A stretch of 64,000 nucleotides of DNA from Vitrella brassicaformis CCMP3155 (taxonomy: Eukaryota; Protista; Chromerida). Made by a program: the position numbers and the translations under genes. The notes under the pieces were generated by a model, which saw only the letters and a program-made list of their open reading frames with translations, had not been told where the DNA came from and ran no database searches. The DNA lies in contig CDMY01000153.1 in the NCBI GenBank assembly GCA_001179505.1, positions 62,001 through 126,000 on the forward strand, in the 5' to 3' direction. This document shows, in pieces, positions 50,261 through 64,000 of the stretch; position 1 is the stretch's first letter, and every line of letters begins with the position of its first letter.

Positions 50261-53200
50261 CTAGGAAGCTGCCACATCGGCAGCAGCGCTGAAAACACGA
50301 CATGCATACAGGACATTTAGGCCCTTTGACACACAGGCACAGATGTGAAAATACCTGTCAAGCATGGGCTCCATCTGTCTGATGTATTCTTGCCGTATGT
50401 GGTCGTACGAGGCGATCTTGGCTTCAACGTCGGCTAACTTACGCTCCAACTCACACGAGTAGCTGTACGGACATAGAATACAGACAGAGACTGCATGGGG
50501 CCAACAAGCTGAGACACGGCCAGATGCGGCCTCTCTCACTGGTTGAGAATTGCCGTTTGGTGCTTGACCAGCCTCTGCTTGAGTACGGATTGCCTCCCTA
50601 CGCTTGTGTGGTACTGAGCCTTGGCCTTCATCTGGAGCAGGTCATGCACTCGATCAACCCTGCACGCACCGAAGCGAGAGTCAGTCAGCAAGGGCGTGGG
50701 CGTCCCCCCTTCAAGACCTTTCTTCATAGACTTGTCTCCTCTGCTCTTCTATCTTCTGCTGCCCCTTGTCGCCCCATAATGAGTCTTCAGGAGGCGGCTC
50801 GCACACCTCCCGCAGCAAGTATGTCCCGCGATATCCCTCCAGGGAGGTGATCAAGGCGTCCAGCCAGAACTCATCGGGGGGTATCTCTTGTAAGGCTTCA
50901 CGGTCTTCTATGTCCTCTTGATCGTCAGCCCTTCTATCTTTGACATCTTTGATGCTCTTCATATGTTGCTCCGTCTCCTTGCCGACCGCAAGCTTACGGA
51001 TATGCGTGAACCTCGACTCGATCGTCATTCCAGCCAGAGGGTCATCTCCTATCTCGTTCTGCCCGTCACCTTCAATCCCCTCCTGCAGTCACAATGAATA
51101 TCTTGGTGCTGCAGCTGCTGCGCTTCCATGCTCACCGATTCGTCTTCCCCTCTGTCCTTCGTTCTGCTGTCACGGGTGTCTGGACGGGACGGAGCCTGGC
51201 TCGGCCTCGTGGTCCCATAGCCCACTTTGTCTGCCTGTCTCTCCAGGATGCTAAAGGCCGACCGTCTCTGGAGGTCGCCCATCCTTGTCCTTGAGTGGCC
51301 GGCAACTGCTCGAAGATGAGATGGCACCCCTTCAGCTTTGTAGCTTCAAAAGAAATGTAGGCAAGCAGCATCACGCAGAGGAAGGACGTGATGCGTGTGG
51401 CGTCTTCCGCCCACCCGAGTGCCTTCCTCAGTGCCTGGCGTCTTTTCTTGAGCCAGTCGGATGCTGATTCGACTATGGGGCTGTTGTTGAATATGTCCTT
51501 GGCGTCGTTCCAGTAGTCCACCAAGCTTCGCAGCTGGCCTGAGTCTTCAAACTTGATGTACGTGAACTGAATATGGGCAGCAACACGGGCAACACAGGTA
51601 ACCGACAGACAAATACATCTTTTGCAATCTCCTCATGATTCGTTCACATAGTATTTGGACATGATGGCCGCGAGGAAGACATTGACGATGATGAAGTAGA
51701 AAAAGGTCATGTACAAGATAAAGAAAACCAACGTGAAGGCCGCGTCCACCTCGTACAAACGATCGACTTGCACATCCCCAACCGCAAAGCTGAAGTCGCG
51801 TCATATATGGTACACCATTCATTATTGCTTTGTGTCCGTATATTTTGCGCTCACCGGAAGAGGGTGAGGAAAGCTATTCCAGATGTACTGAACTCTTCCA
51901 GATGTGAGCCATACTTCACATGAAACAGCATGGCGAATCCTGTTTGACCGATTTCATAAAGGTCCATTCTCCACTTGTCTCTTCTCTACTTGTCTCTTTG
52001 TTTTGACGGTCGCTTACCAAATAACAGCAGCCCCTGCATGATGATCATGGTAATTATTTGGTTGGCCACCTCCTGGATGGTCGTTGTCTGCAGCCTCAAC
52101 TGGGGGATCAAATCTGAATGGACAGGGTAAAAGTGAATGCTGCTGCCTTAGGAGGAACGCGTCGGTGTCTCCCTAAGGCATTTACTGAGGTATTTAAGGA
52201 CGCGGATGGAGACAAAATATGTATTACAGGCACCGAACAACAGAAACATGTAATAGACACGTGAAATGTTGCCCATCTGATTACACACAGGCACAGTAGG
52301 GGAGGAGCGCTCTTCCCCACTACCACTACCGCTTTCTGCGCAATTGCACTCACCTGGTCCAGCACGTATGTTTTGATGGACTCCTTTCTTGGCGACGAGA
52401 GCGTCCGAAACACAGTATCAGCCATAGTCCAGTCAGTCCAGTTGTATGCTATACACACAAGCCAAGCAGCACCGCCCGTCGCCTGGATGTGTGTGCACCG
52501 CCTGTCACTTACTGAGACAGAATCCATCCAGCGAAAATCTGGCGTAGTATGCGATGGTAAGCACAGACAGACAGAGAGACACCGCATCAGAAATGTTCCA
52601 TGCATCAGATCGGTAGAAATCGACCACGTAGCTGCAACGGAAAACGCGAGAGACATTGCAGGCGCTCATGGTCTCGTTTGTCCTCTCTCACTTGACACGG
52701 GCGTCTTTCTCCGCAATGCAGATAATCCTGTGCCTTTGAATCTCCTTGACCAGCTTGACAATGTAGTAGATCACAAACAACACGTACACCGCCCCTAGCA
52801 CGGCAGTGAGGATGCGCAAAGGCTGGTACCAGCCACCTCCTGTGTACGGATTAAGAGGGAAGGACTGGCTGGACCTACAGGCCAAGCACAGACATCCATA
52901 CGCACGTCCACACTGCAACCTTCCCCCCCCACCCCCCAGAGTGTCGTGTGCGCCTGCCGCTGCACCTCTTGACTTGTATCATGCCGCTGGCCCTTAGCGA
53001 AAATCGAGCCGTATTGTATGTGAACATGTCGACGTTGCCATTGTATGTCACGTAATCGAATACTATCGATGCCGTGCGGGCCGAGAACACCTGCATCCAA
53101 ATGAAGGAAGGCACAAGAGTGATGCCACAAAGCCTATGTATGCACCAACGGTGAGGGCCAGACTTTCATGGACCTTGGCTCTTCTCAACGCTCCAACTCG

Positions 53201-56200
53201 CTCGAGTGCTTCTTTTTGCGTCTTTCCGAGACTGACGCTAAAGCCGCCTTTCTGTCTATAAGTATTGCGCGCTGAACTGAACTTCACTATCGATTCGGCG
53301 GGATACGCATCGCCCCTGAAGCAAGCGAAGAGTGCAGTGTGTGAGCAATGACCGCCTTCAAGGCAATACCATGCAGCCGACAGATTCGTGCTGTCGCTGA
53401 GGTCATAGACATCCGACGGACAGCTTGATGGGTGCTTCGTAGCGCATTTGTTGTCAGCGCAGAAGGCGTTGCGAGTTACGCGAATTACAGGGTACGCACC
53501 GCGCCAACGCGACTGTACTCACGCAGACAGAAGAAGATGTGCATCTGCGTCGTGAGTCTGTCAGTCTACCTCCGTTAGCTCTTTGTAACACGCAGGCTGA
53601 AAGGTCATCCGGACAAAAGCTTCCTGCGACGAGACAGAGGCCAAAGTAGAGACATCAAACGGCCTAGTCGATCGCTCCTGAGTACCGGCATGAAGCCAAC
53701 GTTCCAAGCGAAATACCGGTTCAGATACACTGACTCCAATGAGTTCCCACGTGGCGGTCGTGAGGACTTAGCATCGACATCACGCACATCGCCGCTTCGA
53801 TACAACTCATTCCCAACTGCAGCCACCGTCCATTCGTAAATGTGGTCCATAATAGCAATTGATGCATGGTTGACATCTCTCGACAGCGACTGGTTGGTTG
53901 TGGGATTGATCGGGTTAAGGCTGCTGGGCCATTGTGGCCGCTCAATCACGAAGTCTTGCACCTCCATCAGCCGATACGAAGATGTCGTACGTGCCTGAGA
54001 ATGAAATGCAAAGCAAAGTTGGTCGGATGTGTCAGCATTTGTATCTTTTCTCCGCATTCCTACTTGTATGGTAATTATGGCGATGAAGAGAGCCATAAAT
54101 ACGAGTATTCCCAAGCAGTCGATAGAGCATACCTGCTCGCGGCTCTGACGCTTCGCACGGATCTTCTCAGCTTGCTGATAGTTGGACGAATGCAGCCAGG
54201 ACGACTTGTTTTGACTTGTGTGGTATACATCCATTAATACCTCTCTTGCCTCTGCCAGTTCTGCGGCGCTGCGAGGCTTGGGCCTGCAAAGAACACTCTA
54301 CACATCAGACAATCTCAATGTACATATCCGCCCGTCGCGTGTTTTCCTTCCTCACAATAATTCTGAATGCTGGCCGTGTCCAAGCAAATCGCCTCGACAA
54401 ATATCCTCCAAGCTCCTTGATGACCTTGGTCAGCGCACCACGCTCACCCAAACTCATCTTCTCGATGCTGAACGCAGGAGCCAAAGATCATCGACAGGCA
54501 GCGAGTGCCATGTCTCCAAGCCAATCCAGCTCACCGATATATCTGAAGGTCGTAGGCAGACATGATGATGCTGAGAAACATATTGAGCAGGATGAAGACG
54601 AAGAACGTGACGAAGGAATAGAAATAGATCGGCGCAATGGTTGGGGCGATCTCCATCATCTCTTGATAGAAGCTCTTGCCGAGCAGCATGGTAAAACAGG
54701 CAAGGACGGTGCGATTGAACGTGCCCATCGCCGCCAACTGGCCACCGAAGGTGAAGAAGCCGAACCAGACGAAGCCCAAGAAGATGATGAAGAACATCAA
54801 GCTGAACCAAACCAGATTGCCGGCACCCTGGACCAAGAATGCGAAGGCCAGTCAGGTTGCGGCCTACTTTGCCTGCTTACTTGTCCGATGGTGTTGATGA
54901 CGAGGCCATACGTTGGCGATACATCAGACATGAGTGAAAGCGTACGAAAGAACACCAGACAGATGTTCACTCCTGCACGAAAAAGTAGGATATGTCAAAA
55001 GAGAGCAGAAGGGTATCCCATGCTGACCGACAAGCGAGTTGAGCGACGCAGACGTCAGTAGAGCATCCAGTTGTTCAAGCGATGACTCCAAGCTGCAAGA
55101 CACAGATGACGAATCGTGCAAATGAGCAGACAGACATGTCCTCATGCTATATTGTGACGTCCATCCGCACTTGTTTTGGTCGATAGGCAACTTGAGCGTC
55201 CAGTATGCCCTTTGGGAAATCATGAAGATATGCATGCTAATGTAGATGCCATTCAACGTCAGCTGGACAACCTGAAGAGAACACAACGGGTAGAATGACA
55301 CACGTCTCGACCACTGTTTGTTTCTCTTCACATCAACGGCCTTGAAGACGCCTGATTGAAGGTAAGAGACAGGCCCTTCAACAAACGCCTTTACCTCCAC
55401 ACCCACAAAATACAGATAGCACACAATGACGACAATCTCCAGAAACAAGCGGAAGACATTAATCGAGGCCTGCATATCGTAGAGCTCCAGTGTGAAGCCA
55501 TGTCCCTCCAGCTGGTGGCTGATCGTGCCTCCAAGCGCCGCCTGAAAGACGACCGCGAAATGAAAGAACTTCTGCAGATTGGCGTTGTAGAAATACATGT
55601 CCGCAACAAAGCTGGCGAGACTCGCTTCAAACCACCCGTCCGCTCTCAGTTCTTCGATCCTCTGGTGCATGGCCGCCTCTCCCCCGTCGAGATTGACGTA
55701 TTCGATGAATCCCCCCGCTCGCGAGTACCCCCTGCCTCGCGAGTAAGTGTACGTCTGGCCTGTCGAGGCGCCATCAAAGCTTGCCGTGTCCTCATGTGAT
55801 TTGAGTGAGAAGGACTTGAGATTCATTGTGCTCGGGTCGATTCGCTGCCTCCCGATGATCCGCGGATAGAAGCCTTTCACATCTTTCGGCGCCAATGTGT
55901 TCTTCTCCACACGATGTCTCTTAAGAGAGAGCCGGGTCGTGAGCAGCACGTTGAAGAAGCCGACGGTGGGCAGCGGCCGGCTCTGATCGGCGACGCCCAG
56001 CTGTATGTCAAACGGCGATTCTTCATCTGTATATAGTGCCTTCAAAAATGCCGATGCCATCCATTCTCCGACCCCTTCCGTGCTGGTGATGTTGGTGATG
56101 AATGTGCCCGACAACGAGGGAATTGAGAGAAATCTGTTCCGCAGCACTTGGTTGACCTGATAGGACGCTGGAATCGTCAGTTGAAGGAGATTCACCGACG

Positions 56201-56720
56201 CAAAGCTGACAGGTAAGAGAGAAGGGCATGAATTGAGATTATCCTCACCGTTGCGCACTGTTGTGCGGCTCACCAGATGGCAAAGACGATGTAGAGGATG
56301 GCATTCACAAGCAAACTGTCAGCCATTATAACCTCCCTCAAAGGGAATATGGCGATGAACCCCCCCGGAAGCTTCCGAGAGCGGACAAGGCAGGCCAGGA
56401 CACCAAATTAGCACTCCATACACAACACACGTGGGCCGTTTGTCGTTTCGTTAAACCCATCTTGCCCTAATTCTTCTGTCTTAGCTCGCGTACGGCGAAG
56501 GAAGAGGAGGAGGGAGAGGGGAGCAGGGGAGAGGTCGGTCACCACTCACCAGCGCCTCGCCATACGTATCCTTCGTCACTTTTTCGGCTTTTGATCTGAC
56601 GCTGATCTGACACCGGCAGGCAGATGGAGCTGACTCGGAGGATTGAGGTCTCACGACACAGTGATGACGACCCCCGCCCCTCTCCTCGGGGATCAAGATC
56701 CCCTCTGACATGGCTGTCAT
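50261..56720 (-). CDS. Polycystin-2/TRPP-like cation channel with two tandem channel repeats
   Basis: Repeat I: S1 MADSLLVNAILYIVFAIW, large extracellular loop, and S5-pore-S6 FSLMFFIIFLGFVWFGFFTFGGQLAAMGTFNRTVLACFTMLLGKSFYQEM...PIYFYSFVTFFVFILLNMFLSIIMSAY. Repeat II: S1 LGILVFMALFIAIITIQ, loop, and GFAMLFHVKYGSHLEEFSTSGIAFLTLFR|FAVGDVQVDRLYEVD...FYFIIVNVFLAAIMSKY, then a coiled-coil-like tail. Confidence 0.85.
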
Positions 56721-58528
56721 CTCGAAGGCAGCCGTGCCCCTCCAGTCCCCCTTCCTCGCCCTGTTTGTTTCTGCTTTCGGACCAGAGCCTGGCGTTCGCC
56801 CTCTACAACGATGAGATCAAGCTGGAGGAGCTGATGGGTGGGCTGCCGAGCCAGGATGACTCGCCCTCCACCACTGGCCGAGCTCCCTCGTCCTCCGACT
56901 CCACCCCTCCCGGCATCTCACCCTCTACATCGACGAGCAACATCGGCATCGCATCGCCGCTTGCATCCTTGGCAATGGTCGTGCAGAAGGGCTTGCTCGA
57001 GGCCGACCTGCAGTACACCCAAGGCTTTCTGTTCGAGACCGCCCCGGTACTACTGTCGCTCCTGCAAATGGGTCCCCATGCGAGGCAATTGGTGTACGCG
57101 AGTCGCGTCTTCCAGCGCACGGTGGCCAAGATGCGTCAGCTGCGGTCATACGTGCGGACCCTGACGTGCGAGAAGGGCTGGATGGACATACCGGCGGAGA
57201 GGGGACTGAAGGTCACATATCGCACAGAAACAGACGCTGCGTTCGGGTGAGCAGACAGACAAGGGGGAGAGAGAAGGAACATGGGTGTTGCACATCATGT
57301 CGTTCCCGTGTTGTCAGGCCCACCACTGTCAAGGTGTGTGGCGAGGTGGATGCCGCATTCAGCCATGTCATCCAGATCTGTACGGACACCACACAACACA
57401 CCGAGGCAGGAATGTGTGTGTGTGTGTGTGTGCACGCGAAGTGGGCCTCTGATCTCCCCTCACATCACATCGCCTCACGAACCTTCGTTGTCCTCTGCGG
57501 TTTCTGCTGCTTTCAGGCTGTGAAGCAGGGATGATCAAGGATTGGATGCCGATGACCTCGTTCTCCGAGAGACTGCCGACAAGCCAGGCGACAGCCGCGG
57601 GCGTGACCCCTGTCTTCGGAGTCTATCAGCTACAGGTGCGTTCGAAGGGGTAGGCACGCACACTCATGTACGCATCCATTCCTGTCCCTCCCGCACAGAT
57701 GAGCATGCCTTTTCTCGCCAAACGTGAGTGGGTGCTGGACTACTATGACGCCCTGGGTGAGTTAGCGCATCCAAATGCATCTACACGTCTGTCATTCGAC
57801 ACTACCTGCCCCTGTCTGTCTGTCTGCCTGCCTACCTGCCTGCCTACCTGCCTGCCTACCTGCCTGCCTGTCTGCCTTATCAGATCGCGAGACAGGTTGC
57901 GCGTGGGCCTTCATGGACAGTGTAGACGGCGATGGTCATCCTGACGTACCGTCGGAGGCTTTCCCACGGCATGATCCCCATGTGGTCAAGGGCACAATGC
58001 CCATCTCATGCTGCCTCATCAAGCCAGTTGGCCCAAACCGCGTCTACATTGAAGCGCTCACCAACGTGGACCTCAAGTTCAAGCTCCCGCACTGGCTGCA
58101 GGTGCTGCTCTCGAAGATCGCCGGTGAGTGAGTGACAGTGGCACGTACGGACCATGTGGACGGTTTTCACATGTAGCCGATGTGTGCGTGTCTGTGCAGG
58201 CGTGAAGGGTTTCCAGGGCATGGTCAAGGCCACCAAGCTCATCAATCGGTCGGCCCATCACTCTGATTCGTGGGTGCAGAGCTACCACAGAAACCTCAGA
58301 TACATCCAACCGTACCAGGTGAGTTCCATTCCTCAGAATGATTAAGCAGCCCGATGCCCATCGGCCCGTCTGCCTGTGTGGTGTGATGTGCAGGAGTGCG
58401 CTGACAGGGCTTTGGCCAGGGCCGGGGGCGTCAGGAGGGCAGGAGTGTCGAGTGAGGACCTCCCCAAGTTCCCCCTGCTCGACCACCTCGATAACACGGC
58501 TCATGAGCCATTGGTGCCTCTTTGTTGA
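56624..58528 (+). CDS. START/SRPBCC-domain lipid-binding protein (start codon uncertain: 56624 or 56834)
   Basis: KGWMDIPAERGLKVTYRTE...VKVCGEVDAAFSHVIQIC|CEAGMIKDWMP...|MSMPFLAKREWVL...CLIKPVGPNRVYIEALTNVDLKFKLPHWLQVLLSKIA follows the START-fold pattern. Confidence 0.75.
57820..57878 (+). repeat. Intronic tandem repeat of (CTGCCTGCCTAC)-type units joined to (TGTC)n
   Basis: Seen directly in a START-gene intron. Confidence 0.8.
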
Positions 58529-59268
58529 CATGCTACTTTGGTAGTCCTGCGTATCTTCTTGATGCTCTATGGCGGTGTCACGTCGTGTGTAGGGGATTAG
58601 GTGGTCCATGGTGGGTGGTAAAGTGAGATTGTCCTGCTCGCCCGATTCCTTTTTGTGTTGTGCAGGAGTGAGGTTGCGTACGTGCGTAGCTTGAAGATGA
58701 GCAGACAGGTGCATGTTTGCGTGGATGCCTCTCTCATGTCGTATGCATGCCGCCCGAAAACGAGAGTGGCGAATGCGAATCTGTGAGTGCAAGTCGTGCA
58801 TTCATGCCTCTGCCTTCGTCCGTCTGCCTATTGCTGCTGCTTCTACTGATCTATAAGCTGACTGCATGAATGATGCGGTGTCAATGCGTGTCTAGATCTG
58901 CATGTGGACCAGGTTCTATCCGTGTGCGTGTGCATTTGAGAGCGGGGGCGGTGCATGCATCTGTGTGGGTGTGCGTCCAACGACGTGGTGTTTGGACACT
59001 GCTAAGTATATTTGATTTGATGATGGCGTCTTTGGCCCCCCACGGCCCCCACTGGCAGTCTCAAGCAGTCTTGGAAACAACCAGGGTCTTTTGCACTTCT
59101 GACCCCGCGGGGAGTGTGAGACCCCGCCATTTCGGACACTGGTCTCAAGCAACCTCACGCAACTATATATGGCGTCCATTGCGCCGCACATCTATCTGCC
59201 CAATGAGGTGACTGTAAGCACTCGTCCTTCACAGATTCCTTCGCCGTGGTTGTTGCCGGGGTGTTTCC

Positions 59269-62200
59269 ATGCAGCCTGAGGTGGACTTGTTGCTGGTTGT
59301 GGTGGCGTATTTGGTCCTCGTTACGGTGCTCATCCTCCTATGCCGTTTGGTCCTCGCCTGCGGCCTCATCGCTACGCATCCCTTCACAAGCCCCGATGTC
59401 ACGAAGAAGGGCCAGACATCGACGAGAAAGAGGCTCCATGACTACCTGTATGTCAAGTCAAACCTCGGCCACAGGTTGGTGGCCATCATGCACGAAGACA
59501 GATCTTTATGGGCATTCATTTCGGCTCGATGGTTGATATCCCCCATTTGTCCACAGAATTGACCTGCTTCAGACGGTGGGGATGGTTGTTAGAAGTGCGG
59601 TGGGGGAAGCCATGAGTTGGTTGTGCGTGTCGATGACAGGTCCTGAGTGGTCTCAGCTGCGTCACGTATGTCGTGAGTAACACACAGACAGAGAGAGAGA
59701 CAGGCTTGTACTCTATCTTTGTACGTCTGTCTGTATGTTACTTAGCTGCAAACGTACAAGATAGACGTCTTCGGGCTGCCAATGGAATTCACCGTCGGCC
59801 TCTGCTTCCTTTTTGATTACATCCTGCGGTCAGTAGCTAGCTCAGCAAACACTCATGGCGCCACTCTCTTGTCTGTCGTTTGCTGCGCAGGTTTTACCTC
59901 GCTCCGAACAGGCTGACCTACTTGTTCTCCTTCTTTGCTATCGTCGATGTGCTCACGGTCGGTGGAATGCAAGGACATATGACATACCACGCCGGACGGC
60001 GGCATGACGAACGGTGTTGTGTGTGGTTAATGAATGTGTGATAGATAGCCCCGGTGTTTATCCAGGTGTTCCTTGTGGGATTCTACAATACGAGCGGGGA
60101 CACCACACACACGCACGGAGACTTCTCGTATCTGCGTCTCATCCGGTTGATGAGGCTGCTGCGCATCTTGCGTGCCTTGAGGATCGTACGCTCTGCGCCC
60201 GAGAGCGGTCTTTGGCGTGAGATATTCCTGCTCGTCTTCACGGCGTTCACTCTGATCTTCACCACGGCCGGCTTCTATCAGGTGGGATTTGCATTCATGA
60301 CCGGCTTTCCGTCATCTTACCCTGTCTCCCTGTGTGGATGCAGGTGATGGAAGAGGGCCTGAGGGGCGTGGCAGACGCCGTTGATTTCCACCAGGCATTC
60401 TACTTCACCCTGATATCCACCGTGGGCAGACCTCGGTGAGACAGACAGACATCAGACGTGCGCTCGGATGACACCTGTCTCTGTGTGTTTGTGTCTCGGT
60501 CTTCAGCATCGAGAGCACTACATGGCGCGGGACGCTGGTGATCATCGGTGTGGTGGCACTGTCGATCATCATCATACCGCAGAAATTGGGGGAATTGTGG
60601 GAGGTCAGACACGACATCCAGTGGCTGGCCGGCCATTCAGTGACGCGCATATGTGTGTGTGTGTGTGTGCAGGTGCTCAAACACGAGAACATCTACACGC
60701 GAAGGTGAGACACAAGACTAACACCATTATGGAGATGACCTGCGGTGCACCCGTCAATTTTCAGGCGTTATAAGGAGCAGAATTTTGCTCCCTCGCACTG
60801 CATAGTGGCAGGGGCAATTGACTTCTCCACCCTCAACGTTTTCCTCTACGAATTCTACCACGAAGACAGGCTCAGCAACCCTCGGGACATCGTAAGTTTC
60901 GCTGAAACGCTAGTGATGCTTTCCCGCGCTTCTCTTCTCATTCAGGTGGTTTTTTCCGAGCACGAGCCCGACAGGCGCATCAATGAGCTTCTTGACCACC
61001 CTGCGTACAATCAGATGGTGTCGTTCATCCAAGGGTCCGTGCACAGCGAGTACGACCTTGATCGCACCTGTGCACACTCGGCAAAGGCGATCTTCCTGTT
61101 TGTGGACAAGAACGCCTCGGACCACTCATTTGAGGACACGAGGATGATCTCCTTTGTGCTGGCACTGAAGAACTATTTCATGACGAGTGAGAAGTGTTTA
61201 AGTGTTCCCCGGCTGTGCGTGCAAGTGCTGCGGCGCGAGACACAGCAGCAGATATCCCGCGTGCTCGATGAAGAGACTAACGACACAGTGCGCAAAAACA
61301 ACAGATGAGTCTTTCTGGCCAGCGGCAATGCCTCTCCGCTGTGTATGTGTGTTCAGGTAGTGTCGGTCGATACCATCACGAGCACCTTGATGGCGTTGAA
61401 TACGGTTAATAGAGGCGTGCCAGCGGTTGTCATGAACCTGGTCCAGAACAAATACAGAGCACAGACGCCGGGATGGCGATTCTCGCCCTTTCTCTTTCTC
61501 TCTCTGTGTGTCCATGTGTGTATATGTGCTTACAGGTGAGTCATGTCGATCGCGGCCATCTGCTTAGCGAGGACGAGGACCAGTGGTTCACAAGCTACTA
61601 CCAAGGCGCAACGTAAGAAGCAAAGACAGTCTGCGGCACACATGCAATGCTCCTGCTTCTCTTCTTGTCGTGGCAAGTCAGGAGATGTACACAGTCCGCT
61701 TTACACAACCATCTCTTCAACATACCAAGAGCCATCCATTGCGAGCGTCGCTGCTCCAGAGCCGGCTGCTGCCCCTGGCCAACGGGGCCGACGGCGTCTT
61801 CCTTTCCGGCATTGTGGACAGCCTGGTATGACATGAGAATGATTCACAACATGGACAGGCGCGACGCGGTAGCCCTGAAACAAATGTCTCCGCTCTTGAT
61901 TTTTGTTCAGATAGGATGCTCAATGACACGAGCGGCTCACTTCCTGCTCTTTCAGTATGGGGTGGTGCTCTTCGCCCTCCAGAAAAGCGAGCAAGAGAGG
62001 CTCGTGCTGTTCCCTGGAAGGCGAGATGACGTGATCGAGGCATCTGACATAGGGTGCGTCATCACAGAGAACAAGCAGCGACTGAACCAGATCAGCTCGC
62101 TGATGCAGAAGGTAATATGCAGAAGGTAATGTTACTAAGAGCTTTCCGAGCGTCATTTGGCTCCTCCTTTGTGCTGCTGTCTGGTGTAGAAAGGCTCATA

Positions 62201-64000
62201 CATGGAGAACGAACCCCCGCCTGAGAGAGAGGGGCCGAACGAGCAGCGCCCCTCGGGCTGGGCAAGAGCCAAGGAGGGTGTAAAGCGACTGCTCAACCGG
62301 AAGTCTTCCGCCGACGTGTCTGATCCTGCTGATCAGCAAGCAGCGCAATCGAGGGCCAACACCAATGATGTGACGCCACCACAGCCCGCCGGAGAGCTCG
62401 CTGACAGCTACCCAGATTGCACAGGTAAGGAAGCGGTCTACAGAAGGCTGTGCACCCATACGTGTCTTTCTCTTTCTGCTCTCAACCTCAGAGACTCTCG
62501 AGGAGCTGGTCGATGAGGATGCACTGAGACACATGATGGTCGAAATTCAAATTGAGGCAGAGACAGAGAAACAGGATGACCAGCCGTCAGAACCGATACC
62601 AAGAGGCATCATCAAGCCAAAGGATGCGCCAGTCAGCAGGTCACCCAACGTGCGCTTTTCGGTCGGACAGAACGAAACACCCGCGGCTGCGAATGAGCGG
62701 GACACGGTATCGTCTCCTTCACTTGAACACTCTCTTGCAAGACCTTCTATACAAGTACGTGGGGAGGAAAGCTGCAGTCCGTCGATACAAGTGTGTCTGC
62801 TCGTGTGCGTCCAGCCTGCTCATTCGGCAGCGCCAGCCTCCCTTCCGCGCCACCAGCGGCGACCATCCTTTGTGTCCCCACCGTCGACTGGGAGGACCAT
62901 CCCCTCCAGTCCGGCATTTTTCCTTGGCGACGACGATGCATCAAGACCTCACAAAGGATCGGTTCAACAGTGGGACTCCGGCAACGCCGTATGCGCATCA
63001 GACTGAGGGAAAGCAAGAGCTGACACTTTGGCTGCCTCTGTGTGTCTTTGTGGGTCCAGGAACCCAAGAAGGTCATTCCGGGGGATGAGAAGCCCCATGC
63101 TGGTGGCATGTGTGTATCTGCGAGGCCGTCCGTGCACCCCCACCATCCGTCGGAGAGCACCTCTGCCTTTCAGGATGTGGGCTCGGATTCAAGGCCATCA
63201 GGGGCAGCCATGCAGCCCATCAGCATGCAGGCATCCACAGACATGCAGGGACAGGGGGAAGGACACGTTCGTGTGTCCCTTCCACCGGCTGGGATGTCAC
63301 GGGAAGGTGCCAAGCGGATGCTGTACAACCTGCTGGGACGCGCATACGGAGGAGATGTGAGGCAGGCACAATTCCCTGAGAAATAGACCCCCAACTTCAC
63401 TGTGTCTCCCTGTGTGTCAGTGTGGCAAGATGATGGAGGACATGAGGCAGCTCATGCCAACCAAGGAACAGCCGCCACGAGAACGAAAGTAGAACAGGGA
63501 AACAACCAGCTGTACGGCGAACGCTTCATTGCTCACCCACTGTCCTGCCTGTTTCCGCCTTTTGCAGGTGGCGCTCCGGTCACGTCCTCGTGTGCGGCAT
63601 CCCCAGCGACCTGCGTGCTTTCATGGAGGGCCTAGGACGGAGACGCGATAAGGATGTCGTCATCCTCGATCCCACACTGAAGCACTTGGACAGGTGGTGC
63701 AGGCACTAAAGGATGGCCTATGCACGTGGCTCATTTTGGCTGCATTGCGATTCAGACGCCGTTCCGCTACAGCCTTTGATGTGGCAGAAGCGACATCCTT
63801 CGCCGACCCTGTTACTGTCCGTGTCCTGTCGAAACTGAAGAAACTCTCTCAAAACGATCGGAAACGGTGAGGGAGACGCCATACAAGGTGACGCGGCAAG
63901 TATCACCACTTCTCCTTATGTCATGTCCAGGATATGGCTAAAGGGCGGCACACCGATGAGCAAGAAGGATCTGCTCGAGGCTGGCGTGCGCACGGCTGAA
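59269..64000 (+). CDS. BK/Slo-like voltage- and ligand-gated channel (S0-S6, RCK1, RCK2), truncated by the window end, with a non-canonical filter
   Basis: S0 hydrophobic leader; FYLAPNRLTYLFSFFAIVDVLT; S4 YLRLIRLMRLLRILRALRIVRS; pore FYFTLISTVGRPR|IESTTWRG; RCK1 SHCIVAGAIDFSTLNVFLYEFYHEDR...IQGSVHSEYDLDRTCAHSAKAIFL; RCK2 SGHVLVCGIPSDLRAFMEGL...DVVILD and WLKGGTPMSKKDLLEAGVRTAE at the window edge. Confidence 0.9.

What the first reader, a model, noticed from the sequence alone, without database searches (positions are those of the whole stretch)
60344..60600. BK/Slo-like channel whose K+ signature TVGYGD is replaced by TVGRPR
The pore exon reads ...DFHQAFYFTLISTVGRP-R across a clean intron (GT 60436, AG 60505-60506) into IESTTWRGTLVIIGVVALSIIIIPQKLGELWE. 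Spacing from TVG to the S6 Gly matches canonical channels, so YGD is substituted by RPR, and the pore helix looks about two residues short. I find no alternative GYG-coding exon in the intron. S4 has seven regularly spaced Arg and both RCK domains are intact, which argues against a pseudogene. It may be a non-selective or anion-permeable pore, a non-conducting voltage/Ca2+ sensor, or a regulatory subunit (inference).
Basis: partly seen in the sequence, partly recalled or inferred. Interest (0 to 1): 0.8.

Follow-up and report, generated by a model that had tools for sequence, protein, structure and literature searches.

The report
Slo-like channel with GRPR pore
This expressed gene of the alga Vitrella encodes a BK/Slo-type ion channel in which the potassium-selecting motif GYGD is replaced by GRPR; the same change is kept unchanged in dinoflagellates, so it defines an undescribed channel subfamily that probably no longer selects potassium.

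Summary
The window is Vitrella brassicaformis CCMP3155. A spliced contig from a public run joins 60435 to 60507 and shows 14 further junctions of this gene. The mRNA therefore reads S-T-V-G-R-P-R / I-E-S-T-T-W. DNA contigs from two studies match the window exactly, and no GYG-coding stretch exists in any frame of 58000-64000.

The new result is that this is not a one-off. Eleven compared proteins carry an invariant G-R-P-R in place of G-Y-G-D and a P-loop two residues shorter. They come from Symbiodinium, Effrenium, Polarella, an MMETSP transcript, a Tara Oceans scaffold, other unnamed contigs and Vitrella. Nine of them form one clade (99/96) on a tree built without the filter columns. The pore helix plus filter is the best-conserved part of these proteins (64% pairwise identity, against 29-39% in the other helices and RCK1).

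Architecture and fold are Slo: an S0-like helix, seven S4 arginines, RCK1 and RCK2. No Ca2+ bowl was found.

I read it as a voltage-gated gating-ring channel with a constrained, reworked filter that is probably not K+-selective. What ion passes, if any, is untested. I found no paper describing it. The public annotation splits the gene in two and misses its first exons. Another window of this scan also noted this stretch (s1-215946).

The parts
59169..64000 (+). Slo-like channel gene: 23 exons in the window, open 1016-codon reading frame, cut by the window end. The gene continues for about 1.3-1.9 kb on the public contig.
   Evidence: Exon model from splice joints of the X5 contig, assembled and translated without stops. 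The continuation is seen in L001.
59169..59207 (+). Exon 1 with the true start codon (ATG at 59169). The 5' intron is 59208-59274. The ATG at 59269 is intronic.
   Evidence: Loose end of the spliced contig before 59273 matches 59178-59207. This is the first ATG of the transcript part seen, and an in-frame stop lies upstream.
59275..59474 (+). Exon 2: a strongly hydrophobic S0-like N-terminal helix (model residues 18-36) and the linker to S1.
   Evidence: Hydropathy 3.28 over 19 residues. The same extra helix is present in five full-length clade members.
60135..60191 (+). S4 voltage sensor: seven Arg at every third position (model R178-R196), within exon 7 (60045-60281).
   Evidence: Translation. 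Pfam Ion_trans on exon 7, weak and below Pfam's cutoff. R87 of P0001, the seventh Arg, is clade-specific.
60344..60435 (+). Exon 8: turret, pore helix and S-T-V-G-R-P plus the first two bases of the second Arg. G is 60425-60427, R is 60428-60430, P is 60431-60433.
   Evidence: Joint confirmed.
60436..60506 (+). Intron 8 (71 nt, GT..AG, phase 2). It splits the second Arg codon of R-P-R.
   Evidence: Joint 60434/60506 (cut +1) in the X5 contig. No GYG-coding frame inside it.
60507..60603 (+). Exon 9: last base of the Arg codon, the I-E-S-T-T linker, and S6 with the conserved I-P motif.
60765..62111 (+). Exons 11-16: RCK1 domain of the gating ring.
   Evidence: Pfam Slo-like_RCK, 1.4e-11 on exon 12. 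PDB sequence hits are Slo1, Slo2.2 and Slo3 gating rings. AF2 model plus Foldseek.
62190..63488 (+). Exons 17-20: long, low-complexity RCK1-RCK2 linker.
   Evidence: Translation. Joints. The public annotation starts a second gene model here.
63568..64000 (+). Exons 21-23: start of RCK2, cut by the window end.
   Evidence: Translation. C-terminal RCK2 motifs found by tblastn on L001 12639-13560, beyond the window.

Best explanation
The gene encodes one subunit of a tetrameric Slo-family channel. It has an S0-like helix, S1-S4 with seven S4 arginines, a pore domain and a tandem RCK gating ring.

It belongs to a distinct clade of chromerids and dinoflagellates. In this clade the filter G-Y-G-D became an invariant G-R-P-R and the P-loop lost two residues. 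This part is shown.

The following part is inferred. The subunits still form a voltage-gated, gating-ring-controlled pore. Without the Tyr-Gly pair, and with Pro where a left-handed Gly is required, the outer K+ sites cannot form, so the pore is not K+-selective. The invariant Arg-Pro-Arg lines or braces a shorter outer filter and sets a different permeation property. That property could be non-selective or anion-favouring conduction, or strong rectification.

A Ca2+ bowl was not found, so the gating-ring ligand is unknown.
For: Real and expressed: spliced contig with 0 mismatches and identical DNA contigs from two studies. The 1016-codon frame is open across 23 exons.

Slo membership by descent and fold:
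- Pfam Slo-like_RCK, 1.4e-11.
- Ion_trans, Slo-like_RCK and BK_channel_a are on record for the public protein P0001, CEL93304.1.
- PDB sequence hits are Slo1, Slo2.2 and Slo3.
- AF2 model has pLDDT 83.3, and the top 50 Foldseek PDB hits are all Slo1 or Slo2.2 over about 520 columns, E 1e-26 to 1e-18.

Clade:
- G-R-P-R-[IL] is present in 8 further representatives under 50% identical to each other.
- G, R, P and R are invariant in a 9-sequence alignment with 28% mean column identity.
- R146, P147 and R148 occur in 11/11 clade rows and 0/23 other Slo-like rows.
- The clade is monophyletic at 99/96 on a tree without the filter columns.
- Named members are Symbiodinium spp., Effrenium voratum and Polarella glacialis. 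There is also an MMETSP transcript and a Tara Oceans scaffold.

Constraint: pore helix plus filter shows 64% mean pairwise identity within the clade, against 29-39% for the other helices (S2-S6) and RCK1. This is the pattern of a working pore. The GYG set shows 58% in the same region.

Established knowledge: the K+ signature T-x-G-[YF]-G supplies the carbonyl sites. The second Gly needs a backbone geometry that Pro cannot adopt.
Against: No electrophysiology or structure exists for any clade member.

Only a monomer AF2 model was possible, without coordinates, so the direction of the Arg side chains is unknown. Eight arginines per tetramer at the outer mouth could equally plug the pore.

Vitrella differs from the other ten compared clade members just before the Gly: it has S-T-V where they have E-[IV]-[LM]. 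The members need not share one permeation property.

The library type of run X5 is not on record. That it is RNA is inferred from the splicing.

Absence of a Ca2+ bowl rests on a simple acidic-run search.
Confidence: 0.5

Rival explanations
1. Non-conducting sensor. The tetramer keeps the voltage sensor and gating ring, but the Arg-Pro-Arg ring closes the outer pore permanently. The protein would signal through conformational change or protein partners rather than ion flux.
For: There are eight basic residues per tetramer where cations should exit. The Tyr-Gly pair is lost. A long S4 with two clade-specific extra Arg, R69 and R87 of P0001, would suit a dedicated voltage sensor.
Against: The P-loop and S6 are as conserved as, or more conserved than, in GYG relatives. 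S6 keeps the family's I-P motif and has a clade-specific invariant Val. A pore that never conducts would be expected to drift, unless the plug itself is the constrained feature.
Confidence: 0.22
2. Obligate heteromeric or modulatory subunit. It co-assembles with GYG-bearing Slo-like paralogues and tunes or suppresses their conductance, as silent Kv subunits do.
For: GYG-type Slo-like proteins are abundant in protists. One to three altered subunits in a tetramer would change selectivity or conductance gradually.
Against: No Vitrella GYG paralogue was identified here; the word searches found none. Known silent Kv subunits keep GYG. Invariance of all three residues over such distances suggests a self-contained four-fold structure.
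Confidence: 0.15
3. Still a K+-selective channel that builds its sites differently. In Vitrella it could use the retained T-V-G plus other ligands.
For: Vitrella keeps S-T-V-G, which can supply the two inner sites.
Against: The other ten compared clade members have lost the Thr and Val. By established knowledge, two-site filters such as NaK and CNG are non-selective. A positive ring disfavours cations.
Confidence: 0.08
4. Artefact or decaying gene: an assembly error, a mis-splice or a pseudogene.
For: None was found.
Against: Identical DNA contigs from two studies and a perfectly matching spliced contig. An open frame over 23 exons. The same motif occurs in independent organisms.
Confidence: 0.02

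Closest known systems
Slo1 / BK (KCNMA1; Aplysia and human structures 5tj6, 6v22)
   Same: An extra N-terminal helix before S1 (S0-like). S1-S6 followed by a tandem RCK gating ring. Pfam Ion_trans, Slo-like_RCK and BK_channel_a. These are the best fold matches over about 520 residues.
   Different: The filter is T-V-G-R-P-R instead of T-V-G-Y-G-D. The P-loop is two residues shorter. S4 has seven Arg. No acidic Ca2+ bowl was found. Identity is only 19-22%.
Slo2.2 (KCNT1) and Slo3 (KCNU1)
   Same: Slo-family members without a Ca2+ bowl mechanism, gated by other ligands (Na+, pH). The RCK1 sequence hits are similar in strength to Slo1.
   Different: Both keep the canonical GYG filter and are K+-selective.
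CNG channels (filter T-I-G-E-T-P-P-P) and the bacterial NaK channel (T-V-G-D-G)
   Same: P-loop tetramers that descend from K+-channel-like filters. They keep the inner T-[VI]-G but lost the outer sites, and conduct non-selectively. CNG filters are also two residues shorter. This is from established knowledge and is a lead, not a test.
   Different: They carry an acidic residue after the Gly, not Arg. They are a different family: a CNBD instead of RCK domains, or no ligand domain at all. In the present clade the gap aligns before the Gly, not at Y-G.
Kickxellomycotina fungal Slo-like proteins (for example Smittium OLY77781.1)
   Same: A second clade of Slo-like proteins found in the same search that also lacks GYG. 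It is monophyletic at 100/100.
   Different: A different replacement, S-S-[VI]-T-G-L-[ST]-S-D, with no length change. It is an independent origin.

Membership tests
Slo (BK-type) channel family | Voltage-sensor plus pore 6TM core (Pfam Ion_trans) | tested here: met
   Ion_trans on exon 7 is weak: E 2.3e-4, 20.9 bits, below Pfam's 25-bit cutoff. PF00520 is on record for the public protein P0001. The AF2 model shows S2-S6 helices.
Slo (BK-type) channel family | Slo-type RCK1 directly after S6 | tested here: met
   PF22614 at 1.4e-11 on exon 12. PF03493 BK_channel_a is on record. PDB hits are Slo1, Slo2.2 and Slo3 gating rings.
Slo (BK-type) channel family | Second RCK domain (tandem gating ring) | tested here: met
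   RCK2 starts in exons 21-23. Its C-terminal motifs were found by tblastn with dinoflagellate members on the same public contig beyond the window. The downstream exon structure is not supported by RNA.
Slo (BK-type) channel family | Overall fold like solved Slo channels | tested here: met
   The top 50 Foldseek PDB hits are all Slo1 or Slo2.2, E 1.5e-26 to 4e-18, TM-score by query 0.45-0.57.
Slo (BK-type) channel family | Ca2+ bowl (acidic run in RCK2). This defines Slo1 only. | tested here: not met
   No run of 4 or more Asp/Glu in seven full-length clade members. None lies before the L-F-A-S-G motif of Vitrella in L001. This was a simple pattern test only.
K+-selective P-loop channels | Signature T-x-G-[YF]-G in the P-loop | tested here: not met
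   The mRNA encodes T-V-G-R-P-R. No GYG-type motif in six frames of 58000-64000.
K+-selective P-loop channels | K+ over Na+ selectivity of the current | not testable with these tools
   Needs electrophysiology.
GRPR-type Slo-like clade (defined here) | Invariant G-R-P-R-[IL], a P-loop two residues short, a seventh S4 Arg, and S6 Val and RCK1 His signatures | tested here: met
   Vitrella has all of them except the clade's Glu three residues before the Gly, where it has Ser. It lies inside the clade at 100/99 and 99/96.

The most novel reading that the evidence does not exclude
The GRPR clade is the first natural anion-permeable member of the tetrameric P-loop (voltage-gated cation channel) superfamily, or at least the first whose charge selectivity is set by a ring of filter arginines. 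It would be a voltage-gated, gating-ring-controlled channel of chromerids and dinoflagellates whose ion preference was inverted by a three-residue swap and a two-residue deletion.
Probability: 0.15. Interest if true: 0.92.

Novelty: new variant of a known kind. Interest (0 to 1): 0.7.

Why it matters
The GYG signature is among the most strictly conserved motifs in membrane biology. Natural departures such as CNG, HCN and NaK have each taught how selectivity works.

Here a whole clade of Slo channels replaces Y-G-D with an invariant R-P-R and shortens the P-loop, while keeping voltage sensor and gating ring. This gives a ready natural experiment: clone the Vitrella or Symbiodinium cDNA and measure what passes.

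The clade occurs in coral symbionts (Symbiodiniaceae) and ocean plankton, so it may bear on membrane excitability and ion homeostasis in ecologically important algae.

The work also corrects the public Vitrella annotation. Two gene models are one gene, and the first four coding exons and the 5' part of the fifth are missing.

Tried and rejected
- Alternative splicing or a hidden GYG exon was rejected. There is no such motif in six frames, and the only donor/acceptor pair that keeps the frame is the one seen in the spliced contig.
- Assembly error was rejected by identical contigs from two studies.
- A PDB sequence search with the S4-S5 exon gave only designed helical repeat proteins and was uninformative.
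- The three word-index protein searches reached only Symbiodiniaceae or the query itself: clade profile, P0007 pore region, and P0001. So no Chromera, perkinsid or apicomplexan member could be shown or excluded, and no Vitrella GYG paralogue was identified.
- I tested the idea that Vitrella's S-T-V-G is an ancestral intermediate. Holding the other eight GRPR rows together as sister to Vitrella costs 14.7 log-likelihood units, AU p = 0.013. The group was named after seeing the tree, and the basal row P0073 is a long, compositionally odd branch. The order of events stays open.
- I compared AF2 secondary structure with a GYG control. In the GRPR protein the helix is 132-144 and the loop 145-153. 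In control P0011 the helix is 147-160 and the loop 161-170. The two missing residues are shared between helix and loop, which is too coarse to place the deletion.
- Inner-mouth charges after the I-P motif do not differ between GRPR and GYG protist sequences, so they give no hint on ion type.
- Literature searches found no description. Pozdnyakov et al. 2020 (PMC7576140) explicitly leave BK channels out. From my own recollection there is a 2021 paper on a 'consensus channelome of dinoflagellates'; it is not in the library and could not be checked.

Full report
**What is in the sequence**

The stretch lies in an intron-rich gene on the + strand. I built the exon model from splice sites. I then checked it against public runs.

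- One 3345-nt contig of run X5 is spliced, GT..AG, at 15 listed junctions of this gene with no mismatch. X5 comes from the same sample as the DNA-like runs X1 and X4.
- One of these junctions is 60435/60507, reported as 60434/60506 'cut +1', skipping 71 nt.
- Seven further joints were not listed. The 60603/60673 junction lies in a (TG)n repeat that the tool skipped.
- DNA-type contigs of X1 and X3, from two studies, cover 59200-64000 without a single difference.
- The library type of X5 is not on record. That it is RNA is inferred from the splicing, and from the fact that the other runs of the sample hold only the unspliced form.

Joining the 23 exons gives an open frame of 1016 codons that runs off the window end. 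The mRNA reads ...F-H-Q-A-F-Y-F-T-L-I-S-T-V-G-R-P-R-I-E-S-T-T-W-R-G... The second Arg codon is split by the intron. No GYG-type motif exists in any of the six frames of 58000-64000.

The true start is ATG 59169, in an exon that the public model lacks. The ATG at 59269 is intronic.

**Organism and annotation**

An exhaustive phmmer search with the 114-residue RCK1 exon returned 103 representatives. The best is P0001, 99% identical. It is CEL93304.1 / A0A0G4EC76 of Vitrella brassicaformis CCMP3155, a 522-residue partial model that already contains S-T-V-G-R-P-R.

On the public contig the next gene model (857 aa) is the continuation of the same gene. The spliced contig bridges the two models at 62111/62190.

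RCK2 motifs lie beyond the window, at L001 12639-13560. These are L-F-A-S-G...D-R-I-V-I-E-S-F-F and P-Y-V-M-T-N-P-P...V-F-V-I-G.

**It is a Slo-family protein**

- Pfam gives Slo-like_RCK at 1.4e-11 on exon 12 and a weak, below-cutoff Ion_trans match on the S4-S5 exon.
- PF00520, PF22614 and PF03493 (BK_channel_a) are on record for P0001.
- A sequence search of the PDB with the RCK1 exon finds only Slo1, Slo2.2 and Slo3 gating rings.
- An AlphaFold2 model of P0001:1-516 with a 34-row family alignment has pLDDT 83.3.
- Its 50 best Foldseek matches in the PDB are all Slo1 or Slo2.2 chains over about 520 columns, E 1.5e-26 to 4e-18.
- S4 carries seven Arg at every third position.
- A strongly hydrophobic helix precedes S1, as S0 does in Slo1. 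The same helix is present in five full-length relatives.

**The main new result: a conserved GRPR clade**

I aligned the S5-S6 part of my model to all hits. Eight further representatives read G-R-P-R-[IL] where the others read G-[YF]-G-D: P0007, P0010, P0015, P0025, P0045, P0073, P0090 and P0094. By construction they are under 50% identical to each other.

Sources:
- Named: Symbiodinium necroappetens, S. microadriaticum and other Symbiodinium (annotated 'slo'), Effrenium voratum, and Polarella glacialis.
- One MMETSP transcript.
- A Tara Oceans metagenome scaffold.
- Transcript-sized Logan and JGI contigs.

Evidence for one constrained clade:
- In a 9-sequence alignment with 28% mean column identity, G, R, P and R are all invariant.
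- Against 23 other Slo-like sequences, R-P-R is 11/11 inside the clade and 0/23 outside.
- The clade also has its own seventh S4 Arg, an Ile-Glu before the filter, a Val in S6 and a His in RCK1.
- All clade members, Vitrella included, have a P-loop two residues shorter. There is no gap from R-P-R through S6 to the family's I-P motif.
- A maximum-likelihood tree of 42 sequences, built with the filter columns removed, puts the nine GRPR rows in one clade (99/96). Vitrella lies inside it (100/99).
- Within the clade the pore helix plus filter is the best-conserved region. It shows 64% mean pairwise identity, against 29-39% for the other helices (S2-S6) and RCK1. GYG relatives show 58% in the same region.

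Vitrella is the only one of the eleven compared clade members that keeps S-T-V before the Gly. The other ten have E-[IV]-[LM].

Whether S-T-V is ancestral is unresolved. An AU test disfavours Vitrella as sister to all the others (p = 0.013). However, the group was chosen after seeing the tree, and the basal row is a long branch.

**What it probably does**

Shown:
- It is an expressed, intact Slo-type subunit.
- Its P-loop is changed, strongly constrained, and shared between chromerids and dinoflagellates.

Inferred from established knowledge of K+ channel filters:
- Without Tyr-Gly, and with Pro at the position of the second Gly, the outer K+ sites cannot form. K+ selectivity is therefore unlikely.
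- The precedents CNG and NaK keep T-[VI]-G, lose the outer sites and conduct cations non-selectively. They place an acidic residue after the Gly, whereas this clade places Arg there.
- High conservation of the P-loop and S6 argues for a working pore whose property depends on R-P-R. I rate this at about 0.5.
- The rivals are a permanently plugged sensor (0.22), an obligate heteromeric modulator (0.15) and residual K+ selectivity (0.08).

No acidic Ca2+-bowl run exists in seven full-length clade members or before the L-F-A-S-G motif of Vitrella. 'Ca2+-activated' is therefore not supported, and the gating-ring ligand is unknown.

AF2 gives a pore helix at 132-144 and a loop at 145-153. A GYG control gives 147-160 and 161-170. 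This confirms a shorter P-loop but cannot place the deletion or orient the side chains.

**Novelty**

Full-text searches found no description of this pore variant. The broad survey of eukaryotic Kv and CNBD channels states that BK channels were not considered (PMC7576140).

The proteins are in databases under 'slo' or 'unnamed'. The family is therefore known, but the variant is not. I file it as a new variant of a known kind.

Noticed in passing
P0003, P0016, P0032, P0038, P0039, P0043, P0052, P0066, P0077, P0081, P0084, P0087, P0093, P0096 (hits): A second clade of Slo-like proteins lacks GYG. All named members are from Kickxellomycotina fungi (Smittium, Furculomyces, Kickxella, Tieghemiomyces, Dispira). 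Their P-loop reads F-F-T-A-V-S-S-[VI]-T-G-L-[ST]-S-D with no length change. The clade is monophyletic at 100/100. Several are annotated 'calcium-activated potassium channel slowpoke'.
   Followed up: partly
window 59169-64000; L001 8001-14168: The public Vitrella annotation splits this gene into CEL93304.1 (522 aa) and a following 857-aa model. It also misses the first four coding exons and the 5' part of the fifth (start codon, S0-like helix, S1). The spliced contig shows one transcript across the split.
   Followed up: yes
P0012, P0042, P0057 (hits): Further Slo-like representatives from unnamed Logan, ENA and JGI contigs have filters S-T-V-G-Y-E-N-P, S-T-V-G-Y-Q-N-P and S-T-I-G-Y-Y-S. The second Gly and the Asp are lost but the Tyr is kept. 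A fourth, P0061, keeps G-Y-G but reads G-Y-G-N, with Asn in place of the Asp.
   Followed up: no
window about 51782-56326 (- strand; L001 1-4545): The upstream neighbour is annotated as a 1440-residue protein with two PKD_channel domains. This is the two-repeat polycystin-like channel noted by another first-stage finding (s1-239550).
   Followed up: no
window 60640-60679 and 61480-61521: Intronic (TG)n and (CT)n/(TG)n microsatellites. Read laying skipped them as repeats, which is why the 60603/60673 joint is not listed. Short GAGA/CAGA-rich intron stretches (59682-59703, 60474-60494) attract unrelated contigs.
   Followed up: no
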